Assembly (NCBI RefSeq): GCF_036321535.1
Contig: NC_087459.1
Coordinates: 7,378,001 to 7,442,000 of the forward strand
Origin: Camelus dromedarius
Lineage: Eukaryota
Length of the DNA stretch: 64,000 nt
Direction: 5' to 3'
Below are positions 2,551 through 26,749 of this stretch, piece by piece. Made by a program: the position numbers and the translations under genes. The notes under the pieces were generated by a model that had not been told where the DNA came from, ran no database searches, and was given only the letters and a program-made list of their open reading frames with translations. The stretch's first letter is position 1, and every line of letters starts with the position of its first letter.

Positions 2551-3029
2551 GGCTTCACAGGTGGTGGGGACAGGTCAGTGAAGTGGGCAGGCCTGGTCAG
2601 GCTGGAGGCAGGGTCCTGTCAGTTCGGACCCTTCACCCCTGGTGGTTCCTCCAAAACTGCTTAGGCCTGGACTGGTCAGCCTTGGTGAGCCATTCCAAGG
2701 CAGTCCACCGTTAGTCAGTCTCATAGGCAAGTTCCACCACTCTGGCCAGGCAGTCAGAAGGTACTGCCCTGAGGCTAGTCAGTGCCATGTCTGACTTCTG
2801 GGGAAGACCCTACCTGGTCAGTCCCAGGCCAGGCCACCTCTCGAACCGCACTCCCCCCCAAAACAGCCAGATCAGAACGGTCACTGGACCTTCAGTCAGT
2901 CAGTTAAGTCAGGTTGTTCCACCGTCCGCACAATTGGCCTCTGGGGAGGGGGGTAGAAGGGCTAACGGGGCCCAGAAGACACAGGCTGTAGAGGGGCGGG
3001 GGACACAGAGGAACTTCAAGGATCAAGCT

Positions 3030-3500
3030 GTTTAAGGAGCCTGGGGGTGTCTGGCGGGACCGGAAGCAGAAGAGGCTGGCGGCGCGGAGGCTGCGGGAAC
3101 AGAGCCAGAAGAACCGTATAAATCGCTCCTTCCGAGAACACCCAAACCATTTCCTAAAATTACCCAGCCGAGCCGGAACCGCCGCGCCGGAAGCAGCCCG
3201 TCTCTTTCCCGCCCCCACGCCGGACGTGGTCCTTTACTTGCCAGTCCCTGGCTGGAAGCGGACGCCCACATCACCAAAGTTCCGGATTAGGGAGCTGCGC
3301 TGGTAGAGGCCGAGGTGTGTGGTTCAGGACTTGGGTACAGAGGCTCCCCGGTTGCGTATCGGGGGTTGTTCTTTTTGTCGCAGTATATTAATACCAGTGT
3401 TCATCTCTCCCCCAAGGTCCGTCGGCAAGTCTAGGCTTCCTTAAACGAGTCCCGAATCCCTCCGTCGTCTCCGCCTCCTTCCTCATTCTCCGCCAGACCC
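3030..3500 (-). promoter_or_regulatory. CpG-rich WDR24 promoter with ETS/GABP-type motifs
   Basis: CCGGAAG at 3060-3066 and 3187-3193 in a CpG-rich stretch upstream of the WDR24 ATG. The exact TSS is not determinable. Confidence 0.6.
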
Positions 3501-3739
3501 CGTGAGCAGCTTCCTGACAGCTTTCCCTGGGTCACTCGTTCCCCCTGATCTGAACCCCGCACAGCAGCCAGATACCACTCTTTGGCCTAAGGTCCCTCTT
3601 AAGTTTCCACCGGACTGTGAATAAATCGCAAACTCCCGGCGTCTTCCTCTCCCCGCGCACCTCTAGGCCCCGCAGCTTCCAGCCCGCCGAGTTCTTTCCT
3701 GCCTCACCGCCATCACACGTTGTCGCTCTCTCTCCATAA

Positions 3740-4894: not shown

Positions 4895-6134
4895 TCCCAA
4901 AATTGGATGTGGGTGCTGTACATCCTGGGGCTCAAGGTTGGGATGGAAAGGGGTCCCAGCCCCCTCCTCAGCAATTGCCAAGATGTGCCAGCACCCCCAG
5001 GACATCCCAGCGTCTTGGGATTGGACAGAACATGGTGAGCCCATGTGGGCAGACAGAGATTTGGGAAGATGGGTTGAGGGGTGCAGCTAGAAAGGAGCCC
5101 TCCCTCCTCTGGGTGTTAAGGGTGCGCTGGCCACTGGAAGATCAGAGTTGCTGGCTGGCACTGGCCGTAAGCCTCAGCTGGGGCCCCCCTTTTCAGCTTC
5201 CACCTAATGGAGACCTGCCCAGGGTGAAGTGTGGCGCTGAGGGTCCTGAACCCAGCTGGCTACAGGGGCTGTGGGGTGGGGTCCACCCAGGACTGCTCCC
5301 AAGGCCCCAAGGCCTGCAGGCCATGAGGTTCACTCCAGCTTAAGGTCTCACAAGGCAGCTGTACCACCACCGCTGGGTTGAGGCAGACTGGAGCCAACTG
5401 GGCTAATGTTGATTATGCCAAGGTCATTGTCAGCCTAGCGGCCCCTCTCCTAATCCAATTCTGCCCTAGCCTGGCGAGGGCCCAAGGACCTTAGGCCTTG
5501 GAGTCGGGGTGGGGCGAGTAGGGACTGTTTCACACGGCGGCAAGGAAGAGGAGAGGTCGATGGGGTCAGGCTGGCATGAGGAGGGGGGAGGGTGGGTGGG
5601 ACTTGGGCTCCTGGGTGGGCCATGGCTTTGGCGGCGGCCTGTTTCCCCTCGCACCCCTCGGAGGGCTCCAGGCGCGGTGCAGTGGAAGATGCGGGAAGCC
5701 CTAGGGCTCTTCCGGGCCCCTAAGTCCTGGGAGACCCAGTTCCCCTCAATCCCCCTGGGCCCTGCCCGGGGTGGGGGGACGGCGGGGAGACAGAACAGGG
5801 TGTGGCGAGGAAGGCGGTAAGGGTGGCCGCCTGGCGAGCTCAAAGCGCTCCCAGGACCAAGCCCCAGCCCCCCACCGCCGGCGGGCGGGCGGGCTGGCGA
5901 AGGATGGAGGCGGCTGTGGCGTGGTGGAGGGCGGGCGTGCAGTGCGGGCACGAGGGGCATGCACAAAGTCCCCGAATGTGCGTGCGTGCGCGGGGCTGGT
6001 CAGTCCGCCGCCCTCCCTGCCCGGGGCGGGGCCGGGAGGAGAACAAGGGGCCGAGGAGCCGCGGCTCAGCGGCGCCCCGGCGTCCCCGCCCAGAGCGCGG
6101 CGGGCTCCTGCGACGGGGGCGGGGAGGCCCTGCG

Positions 6135-9098
6135 CTACTCGATGACGAGGCAGCGGGGCAGGTGCTGCGAGAAGTACTTGAAGAGCTCAGGGGTGGCCCC
6201 AGGGCAGTTGGTCAGCTCCAGCTCCTCCAGCTCCTGCAGCTGCACCAGGCCCGACAGCCCTGTGGTGGTCAGCAGCGGGCAGCCTGCGGCGGGCGGGAGG
6301 AGGGTCGGCGGCTGAGTGGGCGGGGCCCGGGGCTCCGAGAGGCCGAGGCGGGGGGAGGGGGGGGGTCCTCTGACTGAGACCTGGGCCACAGCGAGTCAAC
6401 CCCAGGTATGGATCTGCACAGGGGACCCGGCAGGGCTGGCTTAGTAGGACTAGGTGTGGGTAGGTGGTCACCGTCCAGGAGGGCACCAGGGGGTCTCACC
6501 TGCCAGAGACAAGAGACGCAAACTCCTCATGGCCAGGAGGTGCTTCAGCCCAAAGTCCTGCACCTGCGCGGGAGGGCGAGGCGAGTTTATTTACGTTGGC
6601 TCCCTGAGGGAGCCTCATTCCTGGGGTCAGGCCATAGGGGGCGGGGGATGGGTTCAAAACGGGGGTTTCTCAGCTCCCCACAGAGTCGGTGAGGGCCCTG
6701 GGGACTCCTTTCTCTCCGCTTATGTCGGCCGCTGGGTGTGGGGGGATCCCAGACTTCCCTACAAGATCTGAGTGGGCCGGGTGCAGGTCAGCTGCTTGTC
6801 TGGGTGGGGGATTTCCCCGTGCCCCCCACCTCCCCTGCCTACTCCCCAATCTCCAGAGGCGTGGAGGGCTGGTACCTGGCAGCACCATCGCAGGTAGAGA
6901 CTGCGGAGGGAGGACATTGTGGACAAATAGCTGAGGCCAGTGTCCGTGATGCGTACACACCTGTGGTCGCAACAGAGGGGGGCTGCCCACCTTCAAATCA
7001 CCTCGCCCGGCCCCTCAGTTTCGACCCCTTCCTTCTTTTTCCGGAGTGCCCCTGGCGTGAACTCCCTGCCCCCCACCATGGCCCTGCCCTTTCCATAGCC
7101 CCATCCCAGCCAGACTACTGGAGGCTCCCTAGTTAGAAGGTCCAGTAAGCCTTACCCAGCCCTGCCCTCCACAGCCCCGGGATGGGGGGATACACATACC
7201 TGTCCAGCACGAGCTCCTCCAGGCGGTGCAGATCGCAGGCCACGTACTCGAGAGCCATGTCGGTGATGCGTGGGCACCACGAGAGGTCGAGGCTGCGTAG
7301 CTTGCGCAGGTTCTCGGCTACAAGCTCCACGCCATCATCGGTGACCTTGGAGCAGCCAGAGAGGCTGAGAGCAGTGAGATTGGGCAGGCTGTGCACCACA
7401 TTGACCACACCGTGGTTGGTGATCTCCCAGCAGGAGAGGAGGCGCAGCGTGTGTGTGCTGTGGCCTTGGCGCGCCGTGAAGTAGGCCAGCGCTGTGTCCG
7501 TCACGTGGTAGGCCTGCAAGCTCAGCTCGGCCAGGTTGGGCAGCAGCTGTGAGATGGCTGCAATGGCGTCATCGGCCACATTGATGCAGTCGCTCACGCT
7601 CAGCGAGGTGATGCGAGCACTCAGGCTGGACCACAGCCCAGCCTCGGTGAAGTCGTTGCAGCCCGACAGCTCAAGGCGCACCACGCCTTGCATCTGCTCC
7701 AGCATCACCTGCAGGCGGGCAGGCATGGGGTCAGGAGGCCTCAACCTCGCCCTCGCCTTGGTACAAGCCTACCACCGATTCCCCAGGTGAGCCCCTCCCT
7801 GCAAGGCGTGGTGAGGATGGTAGGAGTCAGGGCAGAAGGAGCCCACTGAGGGGCAGGAAGCTGTGTTCTTGAGCACGTAGATGGTGTAAACATGCATCAA
7901 GCTGTATGCTGACAAGTGCACTTACAGTGTGTTCATTACACCTGAACAACATTCAAAAAAGGAGGCAGGCCACAGGAGATCTGGGAGCCCAGGGCCTGGC
8001 TGGAGTAGGTGCTCAGAGCCGTTGGTGTTAATGGTTTGATTATTAGAGTCTAGGTCCTGCACAGCTGCTCCTCCAACCTCTGCCCCTACTCCTCCTACCT
8101 CCTCCAGCATCCTCCCAAACCAAAGTGGGCTTCAGAGGCATGCAGGGCCCCGAGCTCAGAAGGGCCTCACATTTAATCGGCTACTTTGCTGTCACTGGCT
8201 TGAAATTGTTAGTCATCTTGGAACATGGAACCTGACTTTTCAGTTTGGACTGGGTCCCCCCAAATTATGTAGACAGTTCCCCACCCCAGAGCCATGCTCC
8301 TCCTCAGGGCACCAGCCCCGCCCTTGGCTGCTTTGCTGCTTGGTGCCCAAGCTTCCTCTCGGTACTGCCTCCCACTTCCCCCCAACACATGCTTAGTGGT
8401 TGCTGCCTGCCCCTGCCCCTGATCCCTGCCCCTTCCAGGCCAGTGTCAGGGCGCACCTCCAGGCCAGCGTCAGTGATGGTGGAACGCTTGAGGCTCATGG
8501 CCTTGACACCCTTCTTGGAGAGGGCATAGTTGTCGATGAACTCACAGATGTCCAGGTCGGAGACTCCAACCAGGCAGAAACCCTCAAAGCCGCGTGCTGC
8601 AAAGCCCTGCAGGCTCACAAATTCCTTCTCACCTCCAGGCAGCACTGTGTAGAGCTCCTTGGCGTGCAGCACAGGTGTGAGGCCCGCCCAGAACTTGGGC
8701 TGATAGAGCACACGCCTCCAGGCCTTGCACACCTGAGCCAGCACGCACTTCTCGCAGGCAGAGAAGTACCAGAAGAGGCCATTGAGGATTTTCTCGTCGG
8801 TGGCCAGTGGTGGCCGTTCTGCTGGGGGCCCAGGCACCGGAGCTGAGGCTGGTCCACCAAGGGGGAGCCCCGCCGGGGGGCAAAGGCCCCCGGCCAGGGC
8901 AGCCCGGGGCGGCGGGGCAGCCAGGCTGGGTGGTGGGAGGGAGAGTGGGGGTGGGTGACAGGGTCGGTTCTTGGCAGCTGGTGTGCCCTTGGTGATGCTG
9001 GCTGTGCCCAGGCCGTTGGGCTGGCCTGGCAGCTTCACCAAACCATTGCGAGGCAAGCATGGAGGCTTGGGATCGCCGTTGATGCCCGGGCTCGACAT
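6135..9098 (-). CDS. FBXL16: F-box and leucine-rich repeat protein 16, 482 aa. Coding exons 9098-8457, 7708-7200, 6960-6876, 6563-6500, 6283-6135.
   Basis: [29 protein letters not shown]..., Pro-rich tract, F-box ([28 protein letters not shown]), LRRs, ends ...[10 protein letters not shown]. Exon sum 1449 nt, all GT-AG. The acceptor at 9112 gives 14 nt of UTR before the ATG. Confidence 0.97.
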
Positions 9099-9289
9099 CT
9101 TCCTCACTCGGTCTGCAGACAGGATCCAGGAAGGGGGAGTGAGTTTGCTGCCGGCGTAGAGCTGGGCTCCTTTCCATCCCTGGGCAACCCTTCCCACATC
9201 ATTCCCAGAACCACCCAAAAGAAGGGGTCTGAGTGCAAGTCCCACCCCCCAGCTACAGGAGGGCAGGGCTGGTCATGACCACGACGCTC

Positions 9290-12760: not shown

Positions 12761-15329
12761 GAATGGCAGTTCATTTATCAGGGTCATGCAGAAAGGGGTG
12801 CAGCTGCCAGAGGCCCAGGAAGCAGGATGGAGGGCAGTCAATGCAAGAGCTGTAGTTCAACTCGTCAGTCTTGGTTGTGACAGAGGCCAGTGTCCACATG
12901 GGAGGGGGGCCACTGGGGTTGGGGCTGGGCTGGTGTCAGAGTCTCTGGGAAGTCTCACAAGACCCTGGGGCTTGAGGTGGGCCTTGCCATTATTCAGACC
13001 CTTGGGAAGAGGATGGCTCAGGTCTCCTTTTTGGCTGAGTACCCCATTGAGTGCTGCAGGGTTAGGAAGCTGGCTGCCTGTCCCGCATAATCTGGCCAGA
13101 CCTAAGGGGAAAGGGACAGGAAGCACCAGAAAGGAGGGAAGCCTGGTCCTGTCCTGCTCTCCCAGCACCACGTCCACCTCCCCATTGCTGTCTGAGCCCT
13201 TCGTATGCCTCCAGACCACAAGTGGGGAGCCAGAAAAACTTACATCAGGTCCATCTGCAGTGGCAGCCCCAGGGTCTGGGGTGACACCTGAGGTATCTTG
13301 GGATTGGGGACACACTGCGGGCTGACACACTCCATGACAAGCCCCGTGACTCAGGCACATTCACATCCCTGCCACTTTGCACATGTCCTCGCAGCAGCGC
13401 AACCCTCCCGCCCCCAGCTTGGAGATGCTTCTGAGGTGCAGGCTGCCCCACCCATGCACCAGGGGCTCTGGGAATGGAGCATGTGGGCCTTGAGGGAGAC
13501 CTGAGCTGGTGCTCCAGCAGACTGAGTCCTGTGGCCAAAGTCAGGGCAGCTCAGCCATATGGGACTGTGGGCACCTTGGGGAGTGGATCCTGGGCTCCAG
13601 GCCTCATCTTGGCCCCTCTGCTCTGAAGGACCTGAGCCCCCATCCAGTCCCTGCTGCTTTGGGCGGCTGCCCCAAACCCTCCCAAACGAAGGAATGTGGC
13701 CTGAGCCCACTCTCTGCAGCTGGTCTGCCTAGGGTTCATCCTGGGCCATTGGTAGGGAAGGTTCTGGGCCACCCACTTACCCCACAGAGCTTCCTTTGCC
13801 ACCACCTCCACTTTCCCCCCACGCCAGACCTCCGAGACACAGCAGCAAGCTCCTACGTGTGACAAGACAGGGGCGGCCAACAGCTAAGCTGTGCTAGCCA
13901 AGGAACCCCTTCCCCGACCTCTGGGTGAGATGTCTCCCTGGCTCTCAGCCATGCAGTCCTTCCTGAGGCCAGACCCAGCTGTCCTGAGTGTCCTAGGTCC
14001 CCTGACCTCAGAGGCCACTTGTTTCCTTCTGACCAGTGGGAGATAGGACTCGCTCAAGTGGCCTGGAAGTGGATGTAAGCTGGAGGATGGGATCTGTCCA
14101 GTGAACCTCCATAGCATTAAAGGTGCTTGTAGGCCTGGCCCAAGGGGTAGTAGAGGTGGGGGCACTAGGCAGTGGAGGTGGCAGGCACTGGGCCAGATGA
14201 GTCCTGGGGTCCCCTGGGGCCCAAACAGCCCTCTTTGCACTGCCCATGTTTATGACTGGTGCTTGAATTTCCCTCCTCCCCAGACAGCTCTTGGTCCAGC
14301 CCTGTGGCCACCTCCTGCTGGGCCAGTAGGTCTCCATCAGTCCTCTCCCCTGGTCTGTGGGACCCCAAACCTCTCAGGGTCCCAACCCAACCCAGGCCTT
14401 CTCCAAGGCTGCTCTCTAGTAGTCCTCAAAGGAGTCTGCTGGGAGAAGAGGCCCTATGCCCCGCTTGGCACAGGGAGGCCTGAGCTGAGCCTGGTCAGTG
14501 GGTCCTGGGAAGTGGCAGGTGAAGCAGCATCCGCCATCTGCTCCTTCCATGGAGGGAAAGCTTCCTGTGCAGATGCTGGGAGGGGCTGGAGGAGTGGCCA
14601 CTGGCCCATGGCTTCCCTGAGGCTCCAACAGCCAGGCCTCCTCTCCTTCTGGGGTCATAAGTGGGGGACTCTCCCCATCCACTCAAACTTCCAGAAAGAC
14701 AGGACTCCCCCCAGCAAGTCTCAGAGTGCCCAGTCCTCCTTCTGGGGCCCTCCAGCCTTGGTCAGCTCCCAGCCCTCCTCCAGAACCAGGCACATGGCCA
14801 GCTCCCTCCCTTCCCCTTGTTCTCCCACTGTGGCAGCTCCACACAGGGTTGGGTCCAGGAGGTGTCCAGGGGCAGATCAGCTCCAGGCCAAGCGTCCACA
14901 AGCTCCTCCGGTAGTGTAATTATACCTAACACCTGTCTCATAGGCCCAGGGCTCATGGTGCTGGGGTGGGGAACCCAGAGTGCAGTCGGGTCCAGGACCT
15001 CACCTAAGCAGCCCAGCTGGGGGTCTGCAATTCAGCTTCCACAGGGCCACAGTCAGGTGGCACCAACCTACAGCCCAGGTACAGTTGCCATGGGGATCGA
15101 GTCTCGACGAGGCGGGCCACTGGGGTGAAGGGCTGTGGGAAGGTCTGGCAGGGCCAGAGGCCCAGCTGCAGCAGCCAGGGAAGGGGCTGCGGTTACGTAA
15201 GCCCTCTGGGGGTGGCAGCGGCGGCGCTGTCCCAAGCCCCCTCCCCACCCCCTCCTCATTGTAGTATCCACGGTGTTGTGGCCTGGCCTCCTCCCTGCCC
15301 TGTAGCCTGGCCCGGCACACACACCTTAC

Positions 15330-16100
15330 CTCGGCCCGGGCTCCTGGCTCATGCCACGCTGTCCACCGGGCGTCCTCCCGTCATGGGGAGCCCGGCATGC
15401 GCACCGGCGAAGCGGGGAGGCGGCCGAGGTGCTGGCCTGGCCGGCAGGGCCCGGCCGCGCCCCGCGCCCCGAGCCCCGGCCTGGCCGGCCCCCTCGGCCG
15501 CGCTCCGAGAGGAACTCCCCGGTGGGAGAGGATCGGCCGCCCCAAGCCTCCCACCGGGGAGGCTGAGGCTGTGCCCAGATAAATAAGGCCGCTTTGCAGG
15601 GAGCCAGGAGAGCACCTCCTCCCTCCCTTCGTCCTCCTCCCCGCGCTCCTCCTCCGCCCTCCTCCCAGCGCTCCTCCGCGGCCGCCGGCGGCGCCGCGCG
15701 CGCCCCCCACCCAGCCTTACGCGCCGCGCCTTTGCGCGCTCCCGGCTCCAGGAGCCAATCCGGTTTGGCGAGCCCGGGCGGGGGCGCCGAGGATGCCAAG
15801 CCCGGCCTCGCCAGCCCCGCCCCGCCCCGCCCTGCCGCGCGCACAGCGCGCTCCCGCCGCGGTGCCCACGGGCACGCGCCAGCGCGGCTTGCACCCCTGC
15901 CCTCCCTCGCCACGGGCGCTCGCACAATAACAAACCTGGGCGCATGGCCGGGAGGGGAGGGCCGAGTAAGTCAGGGCGCGCGGCCGGAGAGCGGGCCCGG
16001 AGCAAGCTCTGCCTGTGTGAAGCGGTGGGGAACCCCAAATCCTGAGGGGCGAAAAGGACTCGAGCCCTTGGGCGCCAGCGGTTGGCCCAGGGGTGAGCGA
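15330..16100 (-). promoter_or_regulatory. FBXL16 CpG-island promoter and non-coding exon 1 (about 15550-15330)
   Basis: Dense CpG island. Strong minus-strand donor CCGAG|GTAAGG at 15330/15329. TATA-like TTATTTAT at 15586-15579. TSS inferred. Confidence 0.65.
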
Positions 16101-17475
16101 ACGGTCCGACCCTCTTCCTCCTGGCTCCTCCTGCGGAGCAGAAGGTGAGGCTCCCTTCAGGGCCCTCATCTGCGCACCTGCTAGGTGCCAGGCGCAGGAA
16201 CCTCCCTCAGTGGGGAACACAGTTGCACACCTGCAAAGCCAGAAACAAGTGACCAGGAGATCATTTCAGAAAGTGATGAGTGTGATGAAAGTAAGAGAGC
16301 CACGGAATGGTGACCCCAGGAGGGTGATGGTGATAGTGGAGTTCCTGAGGACATGACACCAGAGCTGAGACCCCCCCAAGGGTGAGAGGGCAGAGAAAGT
16401 TGTCCAGGGAGGGGTGTGCAAAGGTCCTGAGGCCTTAAGGAGCCTGGCGAGTACCCTCTGGAATGGACTGGAGGTTTCAGTGGTGGCAGCTTAGTCTGGA
16501 CAGACTGGGAAAGAGGGTGGGGTGGGGTGTGGTGGGAGGGTGTGGAGGGCTCTGTCTGGGCCACTGGGGACACCAGGCCTCCAAGCCGGCCCAGGACAGA
16601 GGACAGAAGCTAATGCTGTCCATTCTGGGGTCTCCTGGGAGCAGAGATGGCAGAGGGAACAGGTGTGGGGAGAGCAAAGTGGGGTCTTCGCATCAGAGAA
16701 AGGCCTCAGAGCTGAGAGACAGCCCCCTTGAGAGAGCCTTAATAGAAATGAAACCAGTGGTGTCTGCAACATTTTGACAGGAAGTGGGGCCCAATGAGGC
16801 TGGTGTAACGGGAGGGCAGTGGGAGGGGGAACCAGGCTGGTCTGACCCTGGCTGGTTTGAGGGGCATTGTGCCACTCTTGCTGTATGTGGGACACTGGAT
16901 GGGGTGAAGGCAGCTCTCCCATGTGGCTGACTGCAGAGTCACAGTCTCGCTGACGCTGACCGGAGGAGGCTTGGCCTGGGCAGGAAGGGTGGGTTGCCCG
17001 AAGACTTCGAGGTGACTGGGAGAGTGTTTGTTGTCCAACCCATCCCATTCCCTCCAGTGTGTGGGTCTGGCAGTTTGGCCTTCCAGCTCAGCCTCCACCC
17101 CATGTGTGCAGGCACGGGTCAGCATGGACCCTGGTGTAGATGGTGTCCTGACTGGTGGGCAGGGTTTCACTTGGTGCTTTGAGGGGGTGAGGAGGTCACT
17201 TGCCTTGGGAGAATCTGAGCACTTGCTTAGAGGGACATGAAACACTACTGTGGGGCTCCTCTTCCCCCTGCCCCCACCTGTTCTAGTTGTAGAGGGGTCA
17301 CTTTACAGGCATGTTTGGTCCCCATGCTCCCAGGGCTCCCTCTGCTCTTTGCTGCAGCCTGCAAAGCCCCGAGTCTCTGTCACTGCTGGCCTGAAGCCTT
17401 GCCCTGTACTTGGCCCCTTGCTCTTAGAGCTTCAGCTACACTGGCTTCCCTCCAGGTCCAAGGGGGCACCATGTT

Positions 17476-17542
17476 CCTCACCTGGAGCATCACCTCATCT
17501 GGAGAACCCCTCACCTGGAGCACCTCTCACATGGAGCACCCC
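17476..17542. repeat. Short degenerate tandem repeat, about 16-17 bp x4 (cctcacctggagca-like)
   Basis: cctcacctggagcat / cacctcatctggagaa / cccctcacctggagca / cctctcacatggagca read directly. Confidence 0.6.
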
Positions 17543-18303
17543 TTATCTTGATGCCTAGACACCGAAGAGTCTCTTCAGTCCAGGTGGCTGGGGGTTTCCA
17601 GCTCTGGAGTCATGAAGGGGTGAGGACCAAAGGCTGTTGGCATGTCCCATCCTGAGACCTTGGAGGGCTCTGAGAGAGGGAGCCACTGTCACATCAGGGA
17701 ATCGGCTGCTTACCACAGAGTTCCCCACTGGTGGCTCTTGAGGTCTGGGGCAGTGGCTCTGAAACTCCTTGAGGCTCCTTGCAGGAGGTCCTCAGGCCTT
17801 TCCTTGGGGGGCTCTGGAGTGGAACGTGTGCCCTGGAACCACAGGCATGGGTCCCAAATCCTCCCTCCCTGGATGAGGCCTCAGACAGGTAGTTCTCCTC
17901 CTGGAAAATGAGTCGGGGGTCCAAGAGGATGCTCTGAAGATCCTAGTGCAGCACAGGTGGTGAGAACCCCATGCTCCAGAGTGATCAGGCTGGCTCTGAA
18001 GCTTCCTGCTCTGGAGCCATGGGCCAGATGGACACTGCTCCTCACTGCCTCTGCTCCCCACACAGAGACAGGGGCGCCAAGAGTGCCTGGGGAGGGAAAC
18101 ATATAGGGTGGGCAGGTGTGTTTGTCTGTCCTGGCCACTCTGCAGCCAGAATGGGCACCTACGACAGTGAGGACCTCACAGCCTGGGGCGACTGTGGCAG
18201 CAATGGGTGGCGGGCAGCAGGCAGTCGGCCTCTCTGCTGTTTCCAGCTTCTGTTTCCCTGCCTTCCCTCCTCCTAGGACCCAGGCCTGGCTCACCAGGGG
18301 CAG

Positions 18304-18475
18304 GGGGGCGGGGCGGCCAGAGCTGAGGATGACTCAGGGCCCAGCTGTCACCATGGCAACCCTGTTGCCTAGCAATGGCGGTCTCCCAGTAACGGCTGTC
18401 TCCTAGCAATGGGATATTTTCCCGGGCCCTGGCTGGAGCCTGGCAGTTATTTTTAGTTCGGCTGCAAATCAATCT
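18304..18475. promoter_or_regulatory. Candidate enhancer: GC box, AP-1, four RFX X-boxes, MEF2
   Basis: TGACTCA 18330-18336; GTCACCATGGCAAC 18347-18360; GTTGCCTAGCAAT 18364-18376; GTCTCCCAGTAAC 18381-18393; GTCTCCTAGCAAT 18398-18410; TTATTTTTAG 18447-18456. Confidence 0.75.
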
Positions 18476-19981
18476 GCAGCTGCATTTTTGGCTCCTGGAG
18501 AAGATGCAAGGTGTATGTAGGGGGGTGGATTTCTCATCAAAGGGAGGAAATTTGCCACGTGTCCCAAGGTACAGGCTCATGGGTAGGCGAGGTCAGATTC
18601 CACCTGGGGGTGGAGGGCGGGGGTTGTGCAGGTGAAAGGGAACCAAAGGTTGCAGAGTTGGCAGATATGACTCCCTGATGGGGTCTCTAGGAGGACTGGT
18701 CTCTCCAGCACCCTGGAGTTCCCTAGGTCAGGTTGGTCAGGAGCAATCCAGGCCAGTCTTCATGGTGGACACCATTGGATTGTGTCACTGGGTGGTCCAG
18801 ATTCTAGCTGCTTTCTGGCACCCCTTGGCTCTCAGTTATGGGAACTGCCCTCATCGTCTCCTGCCCCCAGCTTCTCCCAGGGGTGCAGCACCCTGCCCTG
18901 GGCAGCTGAAGCAGCATATTCAGGAGATCCTAGCTGCAGAGGTCTCAGTGGCCACAGGCTCTGCTGGGGACACATCTCTCCTTCTACCCTGCTTTTCCTG
19001 AAATGGGAGCCCAAGTGGGCAGTCTTGGGTAATTAAGAGAACCTGACCTCTCTCTGGGCTTTCTCACCATTTCCCTAAGGGCTGTGTTTGCTGTCCCTTT
19101 GAAGCCAAGTTCAAACTCCTCGGTGGCTGCTGGGCCTGGGGCTGTCCCTGCCCACCTCCCACTGGCCACCTTTCCAGTCCCTGTTTTGCCCTAAGCTCCA
19201 TCCAGGCCTTGGGCACTCTTCCTCCCAACCTGCCCGCCACTGACTCTGCTTGGCTTTTGTGTTATTCCCACAGGCCCTGGACCAGCCCAGCCCCTATCTT
19301 GGTCATGAGTGCTCCTGCCTGTGCCCTTCACCCTGTGGGGTTGCCTCCCCTGTCCCAGGCACTGTTCAGGGAAGGGCTCACCTTGGACGGCTCCTTGTCC
19401 CAGCATCTCCTCCAGCCCCCTGCCAGGCCAGGACCTAGATTTTGAGTGAGGCCCATTTGGAGGGTCAGGGCACTGAAGGATCTGGAGCTGGGGGACTTTG
19501 AAGGAGCCTCTAAACTGAGCACAGACATCAGGAGGGGATACCTGAGGTTTTGGATGTCAGTTGTCTATCCAAGCACTCACACTCCAGGTGTTTACTGAGC
19601 ACCTGCAGTATGTCTGCTCTTGCACCCACAGCAATTGAAGCCAGGTATGGTCTTCTGGGCTCCCTGTCCTTTGGGCAACAGACCTCTGATGGCTAACAAC
19701 ACTTGGTGCTTCCCTGGTGGGGCCAGGAGCTGTGAGAGACAGCCCTTGTCTGTGAGTGATAGCCTCACCAGTCCCCTTGAAGAAGCATCTGGGGCAGGAG
19801 GCAGGGGAAACCTGGTGTCAAAGGGCCAGCTCAGGGCCAGGCATGTGCCCATTCTGGACCAGGTTACCCTCAAGGAGCCGCTCCCTGGCACCAACATACA
19901 CAGGCCCATTCTCTGCCCAGAGTGGGGAGGTGGAGGGTGAGGGTGGGTGAGCCAGGGGCCCAGGGCTGACTCCTCATACTG

Positions 19982-19995
19982 CCACCAGAGGGCGC
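19982..19995 (+). promoter_or_regulatory. CTCF core motif
   Basis: CCACCAGAGGGCGC matches the CTCF core CCASYAGRKGGCRS exactly. Confidence 0.7.
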
Positions 19996-20169
19996 CAGGA
20001 GCCCACTGTCAGCCTCAGAGACTGGGGCATGGGCAGTAACATCCTAGTGACTCCAGAAGTGGAACCCCCTACCCCGTCTCTGCTGGGACAGCTGACTGGG
20101 GTTCCCCCTCCCTTCCTTCTACTGAGCCTCTTCTGCCTTCTCTGTGCCCAGCGCCAGGGCCTGTGTACC

Positions 20170-20480
20170 CCTTTTTATTTTTAATTGGGGAATATATACA
20201 TAAGACTTACCATCTTAACCATTTTTAAGTACACAGGAGCGTTGACTCCATTCACATTCCCCTGCCCCTGGCACCCTCCATTCTACTTTTTCCCTATGAA
20301 TTTGGCTATTTTAGGTCCTTTTGTGACTGGCTTATTTCACTGAAACCAATGTCTTCTAGGTTCTTCCATATGGTAACATGTCAGAATTTCCCTTTTAAGG
20401 CTGAATTATATTCTACTGTATGGATGGACCCCATTTTGTTTACCATCATCCATCAATGGACACTTGGGTTGTGTCCTCCT
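20170..20480 (-). mobile_element. Old L1 (L1M-type) 3' fragment
   Basis: T-rich start, accatcttaaccatttttaagtaca, gtgactggcttatttcactg, ccatcatccatcaatggacacttgggtt: antisense L1 3'UTR hallmarks. Confidence 0.7.
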
Positions 20481-21389
20481 TTAGGGGTTCTCACCCCATG
20501 TTGCCCAGGGCCAGGAGCCAGCTGAGCCCTGCAGGTGCCTTGCCCCTCTTTGACCTGGAAGGGCCCTGGGGCCAGGGGAGGGGGATGTGGTACACTCAGT
20601 TTGGCAGTGCCTCCGATGCCCTACTTCCCCTTAGTGCCATTTGCCCTCATCTGTCTGCATGCACTTCTGGTCCTTGGTAGCAGGAAGGCTGGGGTTGGGG
20701 AGATAGTGGGGTAAAAGACTTCACACCCACAGACAGCAGAGAGTCTTATGCTGGTCCCTGCAGATGCCAGCCAAAGCTCTCACTGACTCCCAAGGGTTCC
20801 AGTACCCGGTTGGAGTCTTGGGTTTGTGCCTAAGGCCTCTATAATCTGACCCCAGGGTGTCACAGGCTGTTGGGAGCCCATCTACTGGGTTCACACCTTT
20901 GCCACGGCTGTCTATCTGCTCCTCCCCTCTGCCTGGAATTCCCTCCAGTCTCCACCTGGCTAGCCACTCCCCACCTCCCTGGCCTCCACAATGACCCTAG
21001 GTGTGGGGGGAATCCTTTATGAGAGTAGGCCCCATTTCAGCTTGTCTCGATCTATTGGGGGCCTAATTCTGGGGCTCAGGGCTGTCCTTGCTCCTGCTTT
21101 TCCACAGTGCCTGCAGCCCCAGCGCCCTGGCCCCTCATCCCTGGTTTCAGTCACCCCCACCCCCTGCCCGCCGCATGTGGCGAGTCACCAGGATTAGACT
21201 GGGGCGAGATGGGGGATGGAAGCCCAGGTCCTACTCTTGGGAAAAGACACCGGAGATGAATCCCCCTCCTCTAGAGGTTCCGTGGGCACCACCCCCACCC
21301 CGGCCAAGGGCTTGAAGGACGGTGGCCCAACCAGGACCCAAGATGGCATACAAGTCGAGGCTGGAGGTGAGGGGACTTCGAGGAGGCAA

Positions 21390-21655
21390 CACGGAGCATG
21401 TCCAGCCGCGGAGCCCCCTCCCGGGTGCTTCCTGGACTGCAGGCTGGTCCTCCCGCTCCTGAGAGCGCCGCTGTGATTGGCGGAAAGTTCGGGGGCCGCT
21501 GCGCGATTGGCCGCCTGGCCCGTCCCCCGCTCCCTGGAAGCTCCCAGGCGCCTCGCGGGGTGCGCGGCCGGCCGGCGCAGGCGGTGGGGCCTGTGCGGGG
21601 CCGGGCCCCGCGCCCCAGCTGCTCCCCACCGCGCCCCCGCGCGTCCTCGCGCGCC
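21390..21655 (+). promoter_or_regulatory. METRN CpG-island promoter with two inverted CCAAT boxes
   Basis: ATTGG at 21476-21480 and 21506-21510, with GC-rich sequence up to the ATG. Confidence 0.6.
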
Positions 21656-23839
21656 ATGCCTCCCCCTGCGCTGCTCTGCGCGCTTTGCTGCGGCCTCTTG
21701 GCCGTGGCCGCCCGCGCCGGCTACTCGGAGGACCGCTGCAGCTGGAGGGGCAGGTACGAGCCTCACTGGAAGCCCTCGCGGACTAACCCTCTGGGGCTGT
21801 GCGCACCCATTAGGAAGGAGCCGTGTCATCCGCTGTTTTGGATGGAACATTCCGACCCAGCACCGCACCGAATCCTTGCTCTCTCCCTCTGAGTCCCGGA
21901 ACGCTGGGCCTCAGTTTCCTCTTCCACAAAGTGGACGCAGCTGTTGGTAGCTGCAGTGAGAGGGTGCACGGGGAGCAGGCTGGCCGGGTGGGGACGCCAA
22001 CCGCCCTCCTCACCACCGCCCGTCCTGTCCGCAGCGGCCTCACCCAGGAGCCCGGCAGCGTGGGACAGCTGGCCCTGGCCTGTGCGGAGGGCGGGATCGA
22101 GTGGCTGTACCCCGCCGGGGCGCTGCGCCTCACCCTAGGCGGCTCCGACCCCGGCGGGCGGCCGAGCATCGCCTGCCTGCGGCCGGCGCGGCCCTTCGCA
22201 GGAGCCCAAGTCTTCGCGGAGAGGGAGGGAGGCACTCTGGAGCTGCTCCTGGCCGAGGGCCGAGGCCCGGCCAGGGGCCGATGCGTGCGCTGGGGTCCTC
22301 GCGAGCACCGGGCCCTCTTCCTGCAGGCCACTCCACATCCCGATATCAGCCGCCGCGTGGCTTCCTTCCGCTTCGAACTGCGGGAAGACGGGCGTCCAGA
22401 ACTGCCTCCGCAGGCCCAGGGACTTGGTGCAGATGGTGAGTGCCAGTCCGAGTTGGAGACCGGTGGGAGTCTTGGAGTCGCACCATGGCCGGGTGGGGTG
22501 AGAACGTGTCCGTCTTCCCCATTGCACAGAGGGAGAAACTGAGACCCCAGAGTGAAGCAGCCTATCAAAGGCACTCAGCTAGTGAGAAGCAGTGCCAGGA
22601 CAGGTGGGAGGGAGGAAATGAGGAAGGGGTGATCCCTCAGCCTGCCGCTTAGGGAGAGAGCTGGTAGGGGGCAGAATCCTGGAAGGGGAAGCCAGGCAGG
22701 GCTACCCAGGCCCCTGGTCCCTGAGGAGTTCAGGGGAGGGGATGATGGGGGACAGAATCAAAGCCTCCGGCCAAAGATGTCCCGGGCTCCCTGGCCCAGC
22801 GGTGACCTCCCTCCCCTCCCCCAGCCCAAAACAACAGAAGTCCAGTGTGAGCCCAGTCACCATGGAGATGAAGCCCCACCTCCTGGCAGGGCACCAGGTC
22901 CAGCTCTTTGCTCTCCTGGAGCTTGCAGCCTGACCTCACAGGGGATGGGGGTCTCTCTCTCACAAAGACCCCCTGACCTCAGAGCCCACCATAACCTCCT
23001 GCCACATGGGCTGGGCTGGTGTCCTTGGGCCCCAGGAGGCAGCCCTGGGAGACTAAGGGGTTATCGCCTGCTGGTGCCTATATGTGAGATGCTTGCACCC
23101 AGACACTTGAGCTCCAGGTCAGGGGGTCTTTGTGCTGGCATGCTGGGCACAGCACCCAGGCCCATGTCTGTGTGTGCATGTTTCAGGCAGGCACAGGCCT
23201 GTGGTGTCACCTTGGGTACTGGGTGTCTTCAGGGTGTGCACACATGCTCTCTGGGATCTCCAGTTGCCATCAGGCCCTGAGAGGGGTCTGGTAGCTTGCC
23301 CTCTCCCTCCTGTGTCCAGCTGGGGGAGGCCTTTGGTGGTCCAGGAGAAGGCAGGGCCTCCACTCAAGACCTCCCCTGCATGCCAGGTGCCTGCAGACCC
23401 TGCAGTGATGCTGAGTTCCTTCTGGCTGCATGCACCAGTGACTTTGGTGAGTGCCCCTGCTGTGGGGAGACCCTGGGGCCTACCTTCCCCTGCATGCCAC
23501 TGGCCAACATGTGTCCCCACAGTGATCCTCGGAACCATCCATGGGGTAACCCACGACACAGAGCTGCAGGAGTCCATTATCACCGTGGCGGCTGTCCGTG
23601 TCCTCCGCCAGACGCTGCCGCTGTTCCGGATAGGGGGCCCTGGGGCCCAGGTGCAGGCCTCCATTCGCACCCCACTGCGCTGTGGTGTCCGCCCCGGCCC
23701 TGGCATCTTCCTCTTCATGGGCTGGAGCCACTTTGGTGAGGCCTGGCTGGGCTGCGCCCCCCGCTTCCGGGAATTCAGCCGTGTCTATGCAGCTGCCCAC
23801 ACCAACCACCTCCACCCCTGTGAGGTGGTGCTGGACTGA
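21656..23839 (+). CDS. METRN: Meteorin (secreted glial cell differentiation regulator), 291 aa. Exons 21656-21753, 22035-22435, 23387-23446, 23523-23839.
   Basis: Signal peptide MPPPALLCALCCGLLAVAARA, then GYSEDRCSWRGSGLTQEPGSVGQLALACAEG..., CRPCSDAEFLLAACTSDF, ends HPCEVVLD*. Exon sum 876 nt, GT-AG, phases consistent. Confidence 0.96.
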
Positions 23840-26749
23840 GGGGCCTGGGAACAGGATGCTGGGAAGGGGCTGGGAGGAGGGTGGGGGGATGCCTCCAGAT
23901 GGCATCACGGTACCCACTGCCTCTGCTGTAACAGCAATAACCAATAAGAACACTGACTACATTCACCAATGGATATTGAGTGCTGGTGCCTGAGCCCAGC
24001 CCCGGGCCTGCCTCACTGCATTTTATTCTCCCATAGCCCTGGGGACTGCGCGATTCCTGCTCCACAGAGCCAGAGACTGAGGCTTGAGGGCAGTGGTGCT
24101 GTGTCTGAGGCCACCTATTCCCCAACCCGGCGAGGGGCTTCTGCTGGGTGGGAGGTGTGACTCATGTGAACCTCGGCTCTGCTGCTCCTGCCCCCAATGC
24201 CAGTGCTTCCGTGGCTCAGAGCAGGAGTGGAGAAGTGGCCATAATTCCCCAGGTCTGAGGCAGCTGGGGTCCCTTGTAGGGGCAGGCAGGCGACACCACT
24301 CTCAACCTGCAAGGGAAGGGGTTGCAAACTGACGGGCAGCCGACTTCCCTGCATAATCCTCTGCAAGCCTGGCAGAGTCATCCTGGCCCCATCCTGCCCT
24401 CAAGGAAGAATGGACCCCTCTGTCCTGAGGCCCTTGATACATGCCGAGCATCCCGACGGCGGTAGGGTCTCCCCTGCGGGGCCCTGTTTGTTGCCCATTT
24501 CCGGCGGGTGGGGCACACAATGGGTTCTCTAAGGACCGTTTCCCGCCACTGGTCCCATTGTTGCTACCTCCGCCTTTCTCCTCAGCCTCAGCCACATAAA
24601 GGGCCAGCCTGTTCTGGACAAAGCCAACAGCTCTGAGGCTGAAAGGCCCCAGGATGTGGGCGCACGTGGGACTACTGAACCCGAAATGAGTGGACTCTGC
24701 TGTCCCAGTCCCACAGCTCCTGGGAAGGAGGGCCACAGCTCAAGTCTTGGGGGGCACCTGTGAAGTGCCCCAGAAACCACTTTCCATCTCTACCTGGTGG
24801 CCTTCACTGGGGAAGTGTCTGTCATCTTTCAGGCAGGAACTGAGGCTGGGAGAGGAACATGGCTGTGCACAGCCCCCAGGCAGGGCTGCTTCTGCCAGAT
24901 TTGGCTGATGTAGGTACTTCGTGTTGCCACACCCTGTGAGGACACTCAGTGTTACTCCAGTGGCTGTCTGGAGTTTCCGTGGGGCTGGCTATCTGAAGCT
25001 GCATTCATGGGGCATGGCCTTTCACTTGGACTAGCTGCTTGCTGTGAGGACTGGTGAGAATTGTGGGTGGGAGCATAGCCACCCTGGACAGCAGGCTGCC
25101 CTGGTTTCCTCCCACCTCCCACCACTCCTGAGGCTTCTTGCTGTGCCCTCTCACCTCCCCAAACTCCCATCCATGGCTTTCTCAGGGCTCAAGCACTAGA
25201 CCTTTCTGTTGACATTCCCACATTCCCTCCTTGGAGAGCTGTACCAGCCTCCTGGCTGTAAATACCATCAATATGCTGATGACCCCACATGTGGATCTCC
25301 AGCCTGGACCTCTCTCCTGGACAGCAGACCTTTGTATCCCTGTTCTTCCCTCTCCCCCCACCAGGGAGTATCTCAGTAAAGGCCAGAGGGGGAGGAGGTG
25401 GGTGTACTCTCCCATCCCCCTCCTCCTCTCTGTCTTGGGAGGCTTTTGCACCTCACCCTTGACTCTTGCCCTGATTGTCTGGCCAGCTTCCCACAGCCTC
25501 TGGTTTGGACAGAGGCCTATGGCCACACTTGGTGGTTGCTGTGGCTTGCCTGTGGGACCATCTGTCCACAAAAACGTGGAGTAGCTGCTCTGGGGTGGGC
25601 CCTAGGCTGGACACTGGCCTCTACCCACCTGCCCCAGGAAGTGCCTCCTACTCACACACCTTCCTCCAGAGAAAAGTACTGGCTTTTCTCGTAAGGAGCA
25701 GGAAGCCGAAGTGGGTGCTGCCAGCAGGGCCAAGGGAGCCCAAGGGAGCCCAAGGGTGTTCCTAGGAGGAACCTGGAAGGCTTGGGTGAGGGCTTCATGC
25801 CAGCGCTGGGGAGTGGCCAAGGTGAAAATGTGGGCATGCAGGCCGAGACTATGGGAACAGGTGCCTGTGGGGCACCTGCATGGCTTCTCTTGGTGTGTGC
25901 ACTCACACAGGTGCACTTGAGTGCCCAGTGCCCAAAGGCGAGGAGCGGACATGCAGGTGAGGTACCTGTGGGTATACACACTGGGAAGTCTGGCTAGGTG
26001 TCTTCATCCAGTCAATCAGCTTTTATTGACTGTCTGCCAGGTGCCACGGGTTTGTATAGACACCAGGAATAATGCAAGGAAGAAAAGAGACAAGGGTGAG
26101 ATGGCTGTGTAAGCACTCCACCAGCCTAGAGCCCACTGCATGTCCTTCCTTTCTAGGGAGGGCCCAGTGATAGCCAGGAAGGAGACAGGATGTTCTGATC
26201 TCTGTGCGGTGGGTCAGCCGCCCTCCTCTCCAGTGCTCGGATCTTGGGAGCAGGGCACCTGGGTTTCCTGCAACAGGGGCACCTGTCCTTCAGGGCTGGT
26301 GGTAGCTGGGGCCAAGGGCAGGTAGGCGAGTGAGGCGGCCTGTACTTGAAGCGTGGGGGCAGCGGGCTCTGGCGTGCCCACATTGTCTGAAGCACCTCTG
26401 TCAACGTTGGGGCTCCTGACCAGTGTGGGGAATGGCGGAGAAGTCCGGCCAGGGCCTGTGTGCAGGCAAGCCTCTGTCACTCTTGGATGTTTGTCTTCAG
26501 AGTCTGGTGAGGAGGAGGTCCTGGCTCTGTCCCCGCACTTGCCTCTCCCTTTCCCAGGCTCTGCCAGGTCACCTCCAGGAACTCAAGTCTTTTCTGTGAG
26601 TGACCTTTTCTGGAGAAGGAAGGTGGTCTCTTCCTCCCAGCCGCCGGGCTGGGTCAGCTACCAGAGGGCCCCGCCCCTCACATCCGGCTCCCCTCCCACT
26701 ATGCTCGCAGAGAGCCAACATCTGTCCGCTCGGTTGTGCTAAATTTCTC

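What the first reader, a model, noticed from the sequence alone, without database searches (positions are those of the whole stretch)
18304..18475. Four RFX X-boxes in 64 bp with AP-1 and MEF2: a compact candidate neuronal or ciliary enhancer
Seen: a perfect 14-bp X-box GTCACCATGGCAAC, then GTTGCCTAGCAAT, GTCTCCCAGTAAC and GTCTCCTAGCAAT, all within 18347-18410. These are flanked by TGACTCA (AP-1), a GC box, TTATTTTTAG (MEF2 consensus YTAWWWWTAR) and AAATCAAT (ONECUT/CUX-like). Knowledge: RFX, AP-1 and MEF2 co-occur at neuronal activity-regulated enhancers, and RFX factors drive ciliary genes. Inference: an enhancer for neuron-enriched FBXL16 (promoter about 2.8 kb away), or a long-range element for the multiciliogenesis gene CCDC78 (14 kb away).
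Basis: partly seen in the sequence, partly recalled or inferred. Interest (0 to 1): 0.7.

Follow-up and report, generated by a model that had tools for sequence, protein, structure and literature searches.

The report
Conserved phased RFX-site enhancer candidate
Between the camel FBXL16 and METRN genes lies a roughly 195-base non-coding block, kept almost unchanged across placental mammals, that carries four evenly spaced binding words for RFX transcription factors plus AP-1, MEF2 and E-box words; it is very probably a working gene switch, though its binding proteins, tissue and target gene are untested.

Summary
Four X-box-like sites start at 18347, 18364, 18381 and 18398, on one strand and exactly 17 bp apart.

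I fetched the orthologous FBXL16-METRN intergenic DNA from eight other placental mammals: narwhal, muntjac, rhino, horseshoe bat, clouded leopard, macaque, deer mouse and dugong. Window 18322-18516 is the single most conserved block of the 6.7-kb interval, more so than either flanking promoter region. Of 197 alignment columns, 128 are invariant in all nine species.

Substitutions fall in inter-site spacers and degenerate X-box positions (Fisher p=0.002). AP-1, MEF2 and one E-box are invariant. The GC box is camel-only, and the ONECUT core and an NFI half-site are broken in several lineages.

There is no support for a coding exon, a structured RNA or an Rfam family.

Best reading: a placental-conserved enhancer built on a phased homotypic RFX array, serving METRN and/or FBXL16. 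The CCDC78 idea has no support.

The scan noted RFX-site arrays elsewhere in this genome (MBOAT7 and PRRG2 introns). This is a new member of a known kind.

The parts
18322..18516 (.). Core conserved non-coding element (about 195 bp)
   Evidence: 197 alignment columns, 128 invariant in 9 placentals. Identity to camel is 0.83-0.96. It is the highest block in the conservation profile of 15000-21700, and the only strong deer-mouse match between the two promoter regions.
18330..18336 (.). AP-1 word TGACTCA
   Evidence: Invariant, 7 of 7 columns in 9 species.
18347..18360 (+). X-box 1, 14 bp, perfect match to the RFX consensus
   Evidence: The central two bases vary freely in Laurasiatheria. The site is eroded in deer mouse and has lost its first G in macaque.
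18364..18376 (+). X-box 2, 13 bp, one mismatch (ends in T)
   Evidence: 10 of 13 columns invariant. The T/C change falls at the degenerate third position.
18381..18393 (+). X-box 3, 13 bp, one mismatch
   Evidence: Macaque and deer mouse carry AGTAAC changed to GGCAAC. Both changes fall at the R and Y positions of the consensus.
18398..18410 (+). X-box 4, 13 bp, two mismatches, the best conserved of the four
   Evidence: 12 of 13 columns invariant.
18411..18423 (.). Conserved GGGATATTTTCC word (GGAAAAT on the - strand, NFAT-like). Assignment is by eye only
   Evidence: 10 of 14 columns invariant. No factor was tested.
18447..18456 (.). MEF2-type word YTAWWWWTAR
   Evidence: 9 of 10 columns invariant. 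The only change (T/C) falls at the degenerate Y position.
18464..18473 (.). CAAATCA(A/G)T word.
   Evidence: ATCAAT becomes ATCAGT in narwhal, bat and macaque. CAAATCA is otherwise conserved.
18476..18483 (.). E-box GCAGCTGC
   Evidence: CAGCTG is invariant in 9 species.
18517..18555 (.). Less conserved tail: a variable G/GT-rich run, then GGTGGATTTCTC
18306..18319 (.). GC box, camel-specific and outside the conserved core
   Evidence: It is not kept even in narwhal or muntjac.

Best explanation
A distal cis-regulatory element (enhancer) about 195 bp long has been kept under purifying selection since at least the common ancestor of placental mammals. It lies in the intergenic DNA between the divergently transcribed FBXL16 (- strand) and METRN (+ strand).

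Its core is a head-to-tail array of four X-boxes spaced 17 bp apart, start to start. I infer that this array is occupied by several RFX dimers side by side. AP-1, MEF2, E-box (bHLH) and possibly NFAT-like factors would bind the invariant flanking words and set the cell type or stimulus response. The most likely targets are the two nearest promoters, METRN and/or FBXL16.

Shown here: the motifs, their phasing, the conservation, and the motif-shaped substitution pattern.
Inferred: RFX binding, enhancer activity, the target gene, and the neural or activity-regulated context.
For: - Motifs and exact 17-bp phasing.
- Gene layout: FBXL16 F-box and LRR exons at 7.1-9.2 kb on the - strand. METRN ATG at 21656 on the + strand, 100% identical to Camelus ferus meteorin over exon 2.
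- Orthologous loci from 8 other placentals. The block aligns in all of them. In deer mouse it is the strongest match of the interval, 83.8% over 222 bp.
- Conservation profile: 0.84-0.92 at 18300-18500, against 0.72-0.76 at the two promoter regions and 0.3-0.65 elsewhere.
- 128 of 197 columns are invariant.
- Variable columns: 5 of 32 fully specified X-box positions against 12 of 20 free positions, Fisher p=0.0019. Changes at R, Y and N positions stay within the consensus.
- Spacing between X2 and X3 is 17 bp in all nine species. Between X3 and X4 it is 17 bp in seven of nine.
- AP-1, the MEF2 word and E-box 2 are invariant.
- Context from papers: multiple X-boxes in one control region act non-additively in C. 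elegans (PMC3245922). RFX and MEF2 motifs are enriched at intronic and intergenic CREB1/CRTC1-bound regions in neurons (PMC12236590). RFX3 promotes activity-dependent responses in human neurons (PMC11888390, abstract).
Against: - There are no occupancy, chromatin or reporter data of any kind.
- X4, the best conserved site, is the poorest match to the RFX consensus, and X2 and X4 end in T rather than C. Another factor might read these words.
- X1 is eroded in deer mouse and weakened in macaque.
- The element was not found within 10 kb upstream of METRN in Tasmanian devil or platypus. Their intergenic regions extend beyond what was fetched, so this leaves its age open.
- Nine species related by a tree are not independent observations, so the Fisher test is only indicative.
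- No paper links RFX to FBXL16 or METRN.
Confidence: 0.62

Rival explanations
1. A conserved regulatory element whose repeated CCTAGCAAT-type words are read by a factor other than RFX, or which acts mainly through AP-1, MEF2 and bHLH with the X-box resemblance being incidental. It could also be a silencer rather than an enhancer: RFX1 and RFX3 are reported repressors at some neuronal promoters (from my own knowledge).
For: - X4 is the most conserved site yet has two mismatches to GTNRCC(N0-3)RGYAAC.
- The GG following X2, X3 and X4 is conserved although it lies outside the X-box consensus.
- In C. elegans a distal X-box acts repressively (PMC3245922).
Against: - X1 is a perfect 14-bp X-box.
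- The A-to-G and T-to-C changes in X3 and the T/C change in X2 fall exactly at degenerate RFX positions.
- By eye, a ZNF143-type reading of X3 is broken in macaque and mouse (CCCAG becomes CCCGG), whereas the RFX reading is kept.
Confidence: 0.2
2. An unannotated promoter or first exon (an alternative FBXL16 or METRN start, or a lncRNA), or a structured RNA, rather than a distal enhancer.
For: - RNA-labelled libraries hold 0.59-0.72 of the sampled words of the intergenic kilobase right beside the element.
- The T-rich MEF2 word could also serve as a TATA-like box.
Against: - The same libraries hold the same share (0.58-0.71) of the whole 6-kb stretch, exons, introns and intergenic DNA alike. 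That is what carried-over genomic DNA gives.
- Rfam shows nothing near a gathering score.
- RNAalifold's covariation term is only -1.38 kcal/mol, and just 2 of 63 pairs show compensatory change, both in the poorly conserved tail.
- The 134-aa ORF on the - strand (18176-18580) is crossed by 1-bp and 4-bp indels among species, so it is not coding.
Confidence: 0.1
3. A long-range element for the multiciliogenesis gene CCDC78, or another ciliary gene.
For: RFX factors drive ciliary genes (general knowledge; PMC5838959 abstract).
Against: - METRN and ANTKMT lie between the element and CCDC78 in every species fetched.
- Ciliary X-boxes are typically promoter-proximal (search windows of 1-1.5 kb in PMC3245922).
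- AP-1, MEF2 and E-box partners are not the usual ciliary grammar (my own knowledge).
Confidence: 0.04
4. A neutral relic of a 17-bp tandem duplication, or a slowly evolving patch without function.
For: Units 2-4 resemble one another beyond the consensus positions, so the array probably arose by tandem duplication.
Against: - It is kept in Laurasiatheria, Euarchontoglires and Afrotheria, while only 25-64% of the surrounding intergenic DNA aligns at all in mouse, macaque and dugong.
- Change is confined to spacers.
- A true minisatellite 800 bp away (17476-17543) varies greatly in copy number among the same species, whereas this array keeps four units.
Confidence: 0.04

Closest known systems
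Homotypic clusters of X-box (RFX) sites in control regions, e.g. the two X-boxes of C. elegans F25B4.2 (PMC3245922)
   Same: Several X-boxes sit close together in one control region. That paper reports cooperation and fine tuning rather than simple addition.
   Different: This element has four sites, not two. They are head to tail at a fixed 17-bp step, 2.3-3.3 kb from the nearest promoters instead of within 200 bp of a start codon. It lies next to non-ciliary genes and is conserved across placental mammals.
Neuronal distal enhancers carrying RFX, MEF2 and bZIP motifs (PMC12236590; PMC11888390)
   Same: Intergenic position and co-occurrence of RFX, MEF2 and AP-1 words. Those papers find RFX and MEF2 motifs enriched at non-promoter CREB1/CRTC1-bound regions.
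   Different: No CRE (TGACGTCA) is present in the core. PMC12236590 says all three motif types rarely share one region. No activity or chromatin data exist for this element, and neither paper mentions FBXL16 or METRN.
Other RFX-site arrays noted by this scan in the same genome (MBOAT7 intron, s1-207555; PRRG2 intron 4, s1-170756)
   Same: Repeated X-box words. The MBOAT7 array is reported as kept in placental mammals.
   Different: Those arrays are long (0.7-1.5 kb, about 27 copies, or inverted pairs) and intronic. This one has four units embedded in a composite element with other invariant motifs. I did not examine the other arrays myself.
MHC class II S-X-X2-Y promoter module (RFX5 complex)
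   Same: It contains the CCTAGCAA-type X-box half word and a nearby bZIP site.
   Different: There is no S box and no Y box (CCAAT) at the fixed distance. There are four X-boxes instead of one, and the element is not at a promoter. The comparison is by eye against knowledge of the module, and the defining layout is not met.

Membership tests
RFX X-box cis-element | Match to the consensus GTNRCC(N0-3)RGYAAC, 13-15 bp, an imperfect palindrome | tested here: met
   X1 is perfect. X2 and X3 have one mismatch each and X4 has two. Sizes of 13-14 bp fit the range given in PMC3245922. The consensus string itself is from my knowledge of Emery et al. 1996, which is cited.
RFX X-box cis-element | Purifying selection shaped like the motif: specified positions kept, degenerate positions and spacers free | tested here: met
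   5 of 32 specified columns are variable against 12 of 20 free columns, p=0.0019. Changes at R, Y and N positions stay within the consensus.
RFX X-box cis-element | Occupancy by an RFX protein | not testable with these tools
   No ChIP, EMSA or chromatin data were reachable, and no paper covers this locus.
Transcriptional enhancer | Non-coding and not a structured RNA | tested here: met
   Frame-breaking indels occur among species. There is no Rfam hit and no covariation.
Transcriptional enhancer | Open or acetylated chromatin, and the ability to drive a reporter or alter target expression | not testable with these tools
Word shares in RNA-labelled runs are uninformative.
Neuronal activity-regulated enhancer | AP-1 site plus stimulus-induced acetylation or eRNA in neurons | tested here: inconclusive
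   The AP-1 word is present and invariant, as is MEF2. Inducibility and tissue could not be tested.
Ciliary-gene X-box promoter | X-box within a few hundred bp of the start of a ciliary gene | tested here: not met
   The element is 3.3 kb from the METRN ATG and about 2.3-2.8 kb from the conserved CpG-rich FBXL16 5' block. By my knowledge neither gene is ciliary. CCDC78 lies two genes away.
MHC class II SXY module | S, X, X2 and Y boxes in fixed order and spacing at a promoter | tested here: not met
   There is no CCAAT or ATTGG Y box at the required distance, and the X-boxes are fourfold (by eye).
Minisatellite / VNTR | Copy number varies among species | tested here: not met
   Four units are present in 7 of 9 species, and three intact plus one eroded in macaque and deer mouse. 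Tandem Repeats Finder does not report the array.

The most novel reading that the evidence does not exclude
Tightly phased X-box arrays form a distinct, recurrent class of placental-conserved elements: this one, plus the MBOAT7 and PRRG2 intronic arrays noted by the scan. On such arrays RFX dimers would tile the DNA at near-maximal density, one dimer per 17 bp, and act as a cooperative platform that is perhaps sensitive to methylation. The T/C difference in X2 falls at a CpG, GTCGCC versus GTTGCC. From memory of the MDBP/RFX1 literature, RFX1 reads 5-methyl-C as T. The function would go beyond that of an ordinary enhancer.
Probability: 0.15. Interest if true: 0.65.

Novelty: new member of a known kind. 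Interest (0 to 1): 0.4.

Why it matters
If RFX proteins do occupy it, this is a compact, sharply bounded element of about 195 bp in which motif number, order and spacing have been held for roughly 100 million years.

- It is small enough for a single oligonucleotide, so it suits tests of whether the spacing of homotypic RFX sites matters.
- It may also link RFX factors, whose loss causes neurodevelopmental disorders, to METRN (a glial differentiation factor) or to brain-enriched FBXL16.

It is not a new kind of element. The human and mouse orthologues are almost certainly already marked as conserved elements in public browser tracks, although I found no paper describing it.

Tried and rejected
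- **Read laying.** The second sequencing-run query was placed beside them (18441-19440). Later paper and findings searches used gene and factor names only.
- Local scripts on the window and the stored alignment A2 and fold_alignment on A2 did include those columns. These are computations on data already held, not searches.
- **RNA evidence.** It is uninformative. RNA-labelled runs hold the same share of words in intergenic DNA as across the gene, which is most simply genomic DNA carry-over.
- **Deeper conservation.**
  - Opossum and sugar glider look-ups returned no DNA.
  - Tasmanian devil and platypus loci show no element within 10 kb upstream of METRN. No neighbouring gene was called in either locus, so absence cannot be claimed.
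- **Rfam.** Only three sub-threshold matches.
- **RNA structure.** No covariation.
- **Coding.** Rejected because of indels.
- **Literature.** Nothing links RFX to FBXL16 or METRN, and nothing describes tandem X-box arrays in mammals.
- **Motif readings considered by eye and rejected.** CTCF, ZNF143 and the SXY module.

Full report
**What is in the sequence**

- Four X-box-like sites start at 18347, 18364, 18381 and 18398.
- TGACTCA is at 18330-18336, and a GC box at about 18306-18319.
- TTATTTTTAG is at 18447-18456, and AAATCAAT at 18466-18473.

Match to GTNRCC(N0-3)RGYAAC varies by site. Only X1 is perfect. X2 and X3 have one mismatch each, and X4 has two.

On chance:
- The strict 14-bp consensus is expected 0.08 times per window.
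- The loose pattern occurs five times in 64 kb, about the simulated mean of four, yet four of the five fall within 64 bp. That is far beyond chance.
- The AP-1, MEF2 and ATCRAT words are individually common in the window.

**Where it lies**

The genome is a camel (earlier notes). METRN exon 2 is 100% identical to Camelus ferus meteorin.
- FBXL16 runs on the - strand. Its LRR exon is at 7133-7744 and its F-box exon at 8304-9245.
- A conserved, CpG-rich block at about 15.0-16.1 kb is presumably the FBXL16 5' end.
- METRN runs on the + strand, with its ATG at 21656.
- The element therefore sits in the intergenic DNA between two divergent genes, about 2.3-2.8 kb from the FBXL16 5' block and 3.3 kb from the METRN ATG.
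- ANTKMT and CCDC78 follow METRN in every species fetched.

**Conservation**

I searched with METRN exon 2 for orthologous proteins. I then fetched each gene with 10 kb of flank from narwhal, muntjac, black rhino, horseshoe bat, clouded leopard, deer mouse, dugong and macaque.
- In Laurasiatheria the whole intergenic region aligns at 70-81%.
- In deer mouse, macaque and dugong only 25-64% aligns at all.
- The stretch 18322-18541 is the strongest deer-mouse match of the interval, at 83.8% over 222 bp.
- A per-base profile over 15000-21700 peaks at 18300-18500. There, 0.84-0.92 of bases are identical across the eight other species. The figure is 0.72-0.76 at the FBXL16 and METRN promoter regions.
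- In the nine-species alignment (A2) the core 18322-18516 has 128 invariant columns of 197. Identity to camel is 0.83-0.96.
- The element was not found within 10 kb upstream of METRN in Tasmanian devil or platypus. Those loci show no neighbouring gene, so the interval is longer than what I could fetch. Its age is at least that of placental mammals, with the older limit unknown.

**Shape of the constraint**

One search lists each motif in each species.
- AP-1 is invariant, as is the second E-box (CAGCTG, within GCAGCTGC).
- The MEF2 word changes only at its degenerate first position (T/C).
- Within the array, the three inter-site spacers are the most variable columns, and two of them have no invariant column. 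They also absorb the only indels: minus 4 bp in narwhal, minus 1 in muntjac, and plus 1 between X1 and X2 in macaque, deer mouse and dugong.
- X1 varies in its two central bases. X2 varies at the N position.
- X3 changes AGTAAC to GGCAAC in macaque and deer mouse, and both changes fall at R/Y positions.
- Counted by column, 5 of 32 fully specified positions vary, each in a single species. Among free positions 12 of 20 vary (Fisher p=0.0019). The species are related, so this is indicative only.
- X2-X3 spacing is 17 bp in all nine species. X3-X4 spacing is 17 bp in seven.

Three of the listed or candidate words do not hold up.
- The ONECUT core is broken in three lineages.
- The TTGGC half-site that I considered for NFI is broken in macaque and deer mouse.

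**Rivals**

- *Coding.* The - strand ORF at 18176-18580 is crossed by 1-bp and 4-bp indels.
- *RNA.* Rfam gives only sub-threshold noise. RNAalifold finds a covariation term of -1.38 kcal/mol, with compensatory change in 2 of 63 pairs, both in the poorly conserved tail.
Libraries labelled RNA hold 0.59-0.72 of the words of the adjacent intergenic kilobase, and the same share of the whole 6-kb stretch. This looks like genomic DNA carry-over and says nothing about the element.
- *Neutral minisatellite.* A true minisatellite 800 bp away (17476-17543) varies greatly in copy number among these species. This array keeps four units.

**Mechanism proposed**

Shown: a composite element whose motif content, order and spacing are under purifying selection.

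Inferred:
- RFX dimers occupy the four X-boxes.
- A 17-bp step is close to the tightest packing possible. This rests on my knowledge of the RFX1 DNA-binding domain crystal structure on a 16-bp duplex (recalled from memory, not tested here).
- Neighbouring dimers would then touch or cooperate. The nearest precedent is the non-additive behaviour of paired X-boxes in C. elegans (PMC3245922).
- AP-1, MEF2, a bHLH factor and perhaps NFAT would supply context.
- AP-1, MEF2 and NFAT all respond to calcium signalling. RFX3 has been tied to activity-dependent transcription in human neurons (PMC11888390). RFX and MEF2 motifs mark distal CREB1/CRTC1-bound regions (PMC12236590).
- For the target I rate METRN and FBXL16 about equally, and CCDC78 as very unlikely. 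METRN gains some weight from a second conserved X-box-like palindrome in its intron 2 (window 22856-22869), which is kept even in Tasmanian devil.

**Comparison and novelty**

The element works like a homotypic-cluster enhancer. It meets the sequence-level criteria of X-box sites. It does not meet the defining layout of a ciliary X-box promoter or of the MHC class II SXY module.

No paper links RFX with FBXL16 or METRN, or describes mammalian tandem X-box arrays. The scan itself noted other RFX-site arrays in this genome, in MBOAT7 and PRRG2 introns. I did not examine those.

Verdict: a real, strongly conserved candidate enhancer and a new member of a known kind. Its moderately unusual feature is the phased four-site RFX array. 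Interest 0.4.

Noticed in passing
window 22830-22870 (METRN intron 2); L010 about 15690-15760: A second conserved X-box-like palindrome: GTCACCATGGAGAT in camel, GTCNCCATGGAGAC in other placentals. An invariant AACAAAAGTCCAGTGTG word precedes it. Both are also present in Tasmanian devil with a small insertion between them. METRN may therefore carry RFX-type sites on both sides of its promoter.
   Followed up: partly
window 17476-17543; L009 about 2450-3650; L003 about 5160-5400: A 16/32-bp minisatellite (unit CCTCACCTGGAGAACC) lies 800 bp from the element. It has about 4 copies in camel but is expanded to over a kilobase in macaque and to several hundred bases in rhino. It makes a useful contrast with the copy-stable X-box array.
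   Followed up: partly
window 21398-21655: The reading frame stays open for 86 codons upstream of the METRN ATG. This probably explains the over-long predicted meteorins in databases (377 aa in Camelus ferus, 336 aa in narwhal, 334 aa in macaque isoform X1, against about 291 aa). It is likely an annotation artefact rather than a real N-terminal extension.
   Followed up: no
window 17900-23890 and 18441-19440: Libraries filed as RNA-Seq of a 'reproductive system metagenome' (studies P1, P2) hold 0.6-0.7 of the sampled words of exons, introns and intergenic DNA alike. This suggests substantial camel genomic DNA in those libraries.
   Followed up: no
window 18364-18369 and orthologues: The third base of X-box 2 is T in camel, narwhal, muntjac and rhino. 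In bat, leopard, macaque, deer mouse and dugong it is C within a CpG (GTCGCC), so the T form looks like a deaminated CpG. RFX1 (MDBP) is said to read 5-methyl-C as T (from memory), so the CpG form could be a methylation-dependent site.
   Followed up: no
window 18900-19000 and 19900-20200: Secondary, weaker conservation bumps in the same intergenic region (0.64-0.70 in the profile). They were not examined.
   Followed up: no
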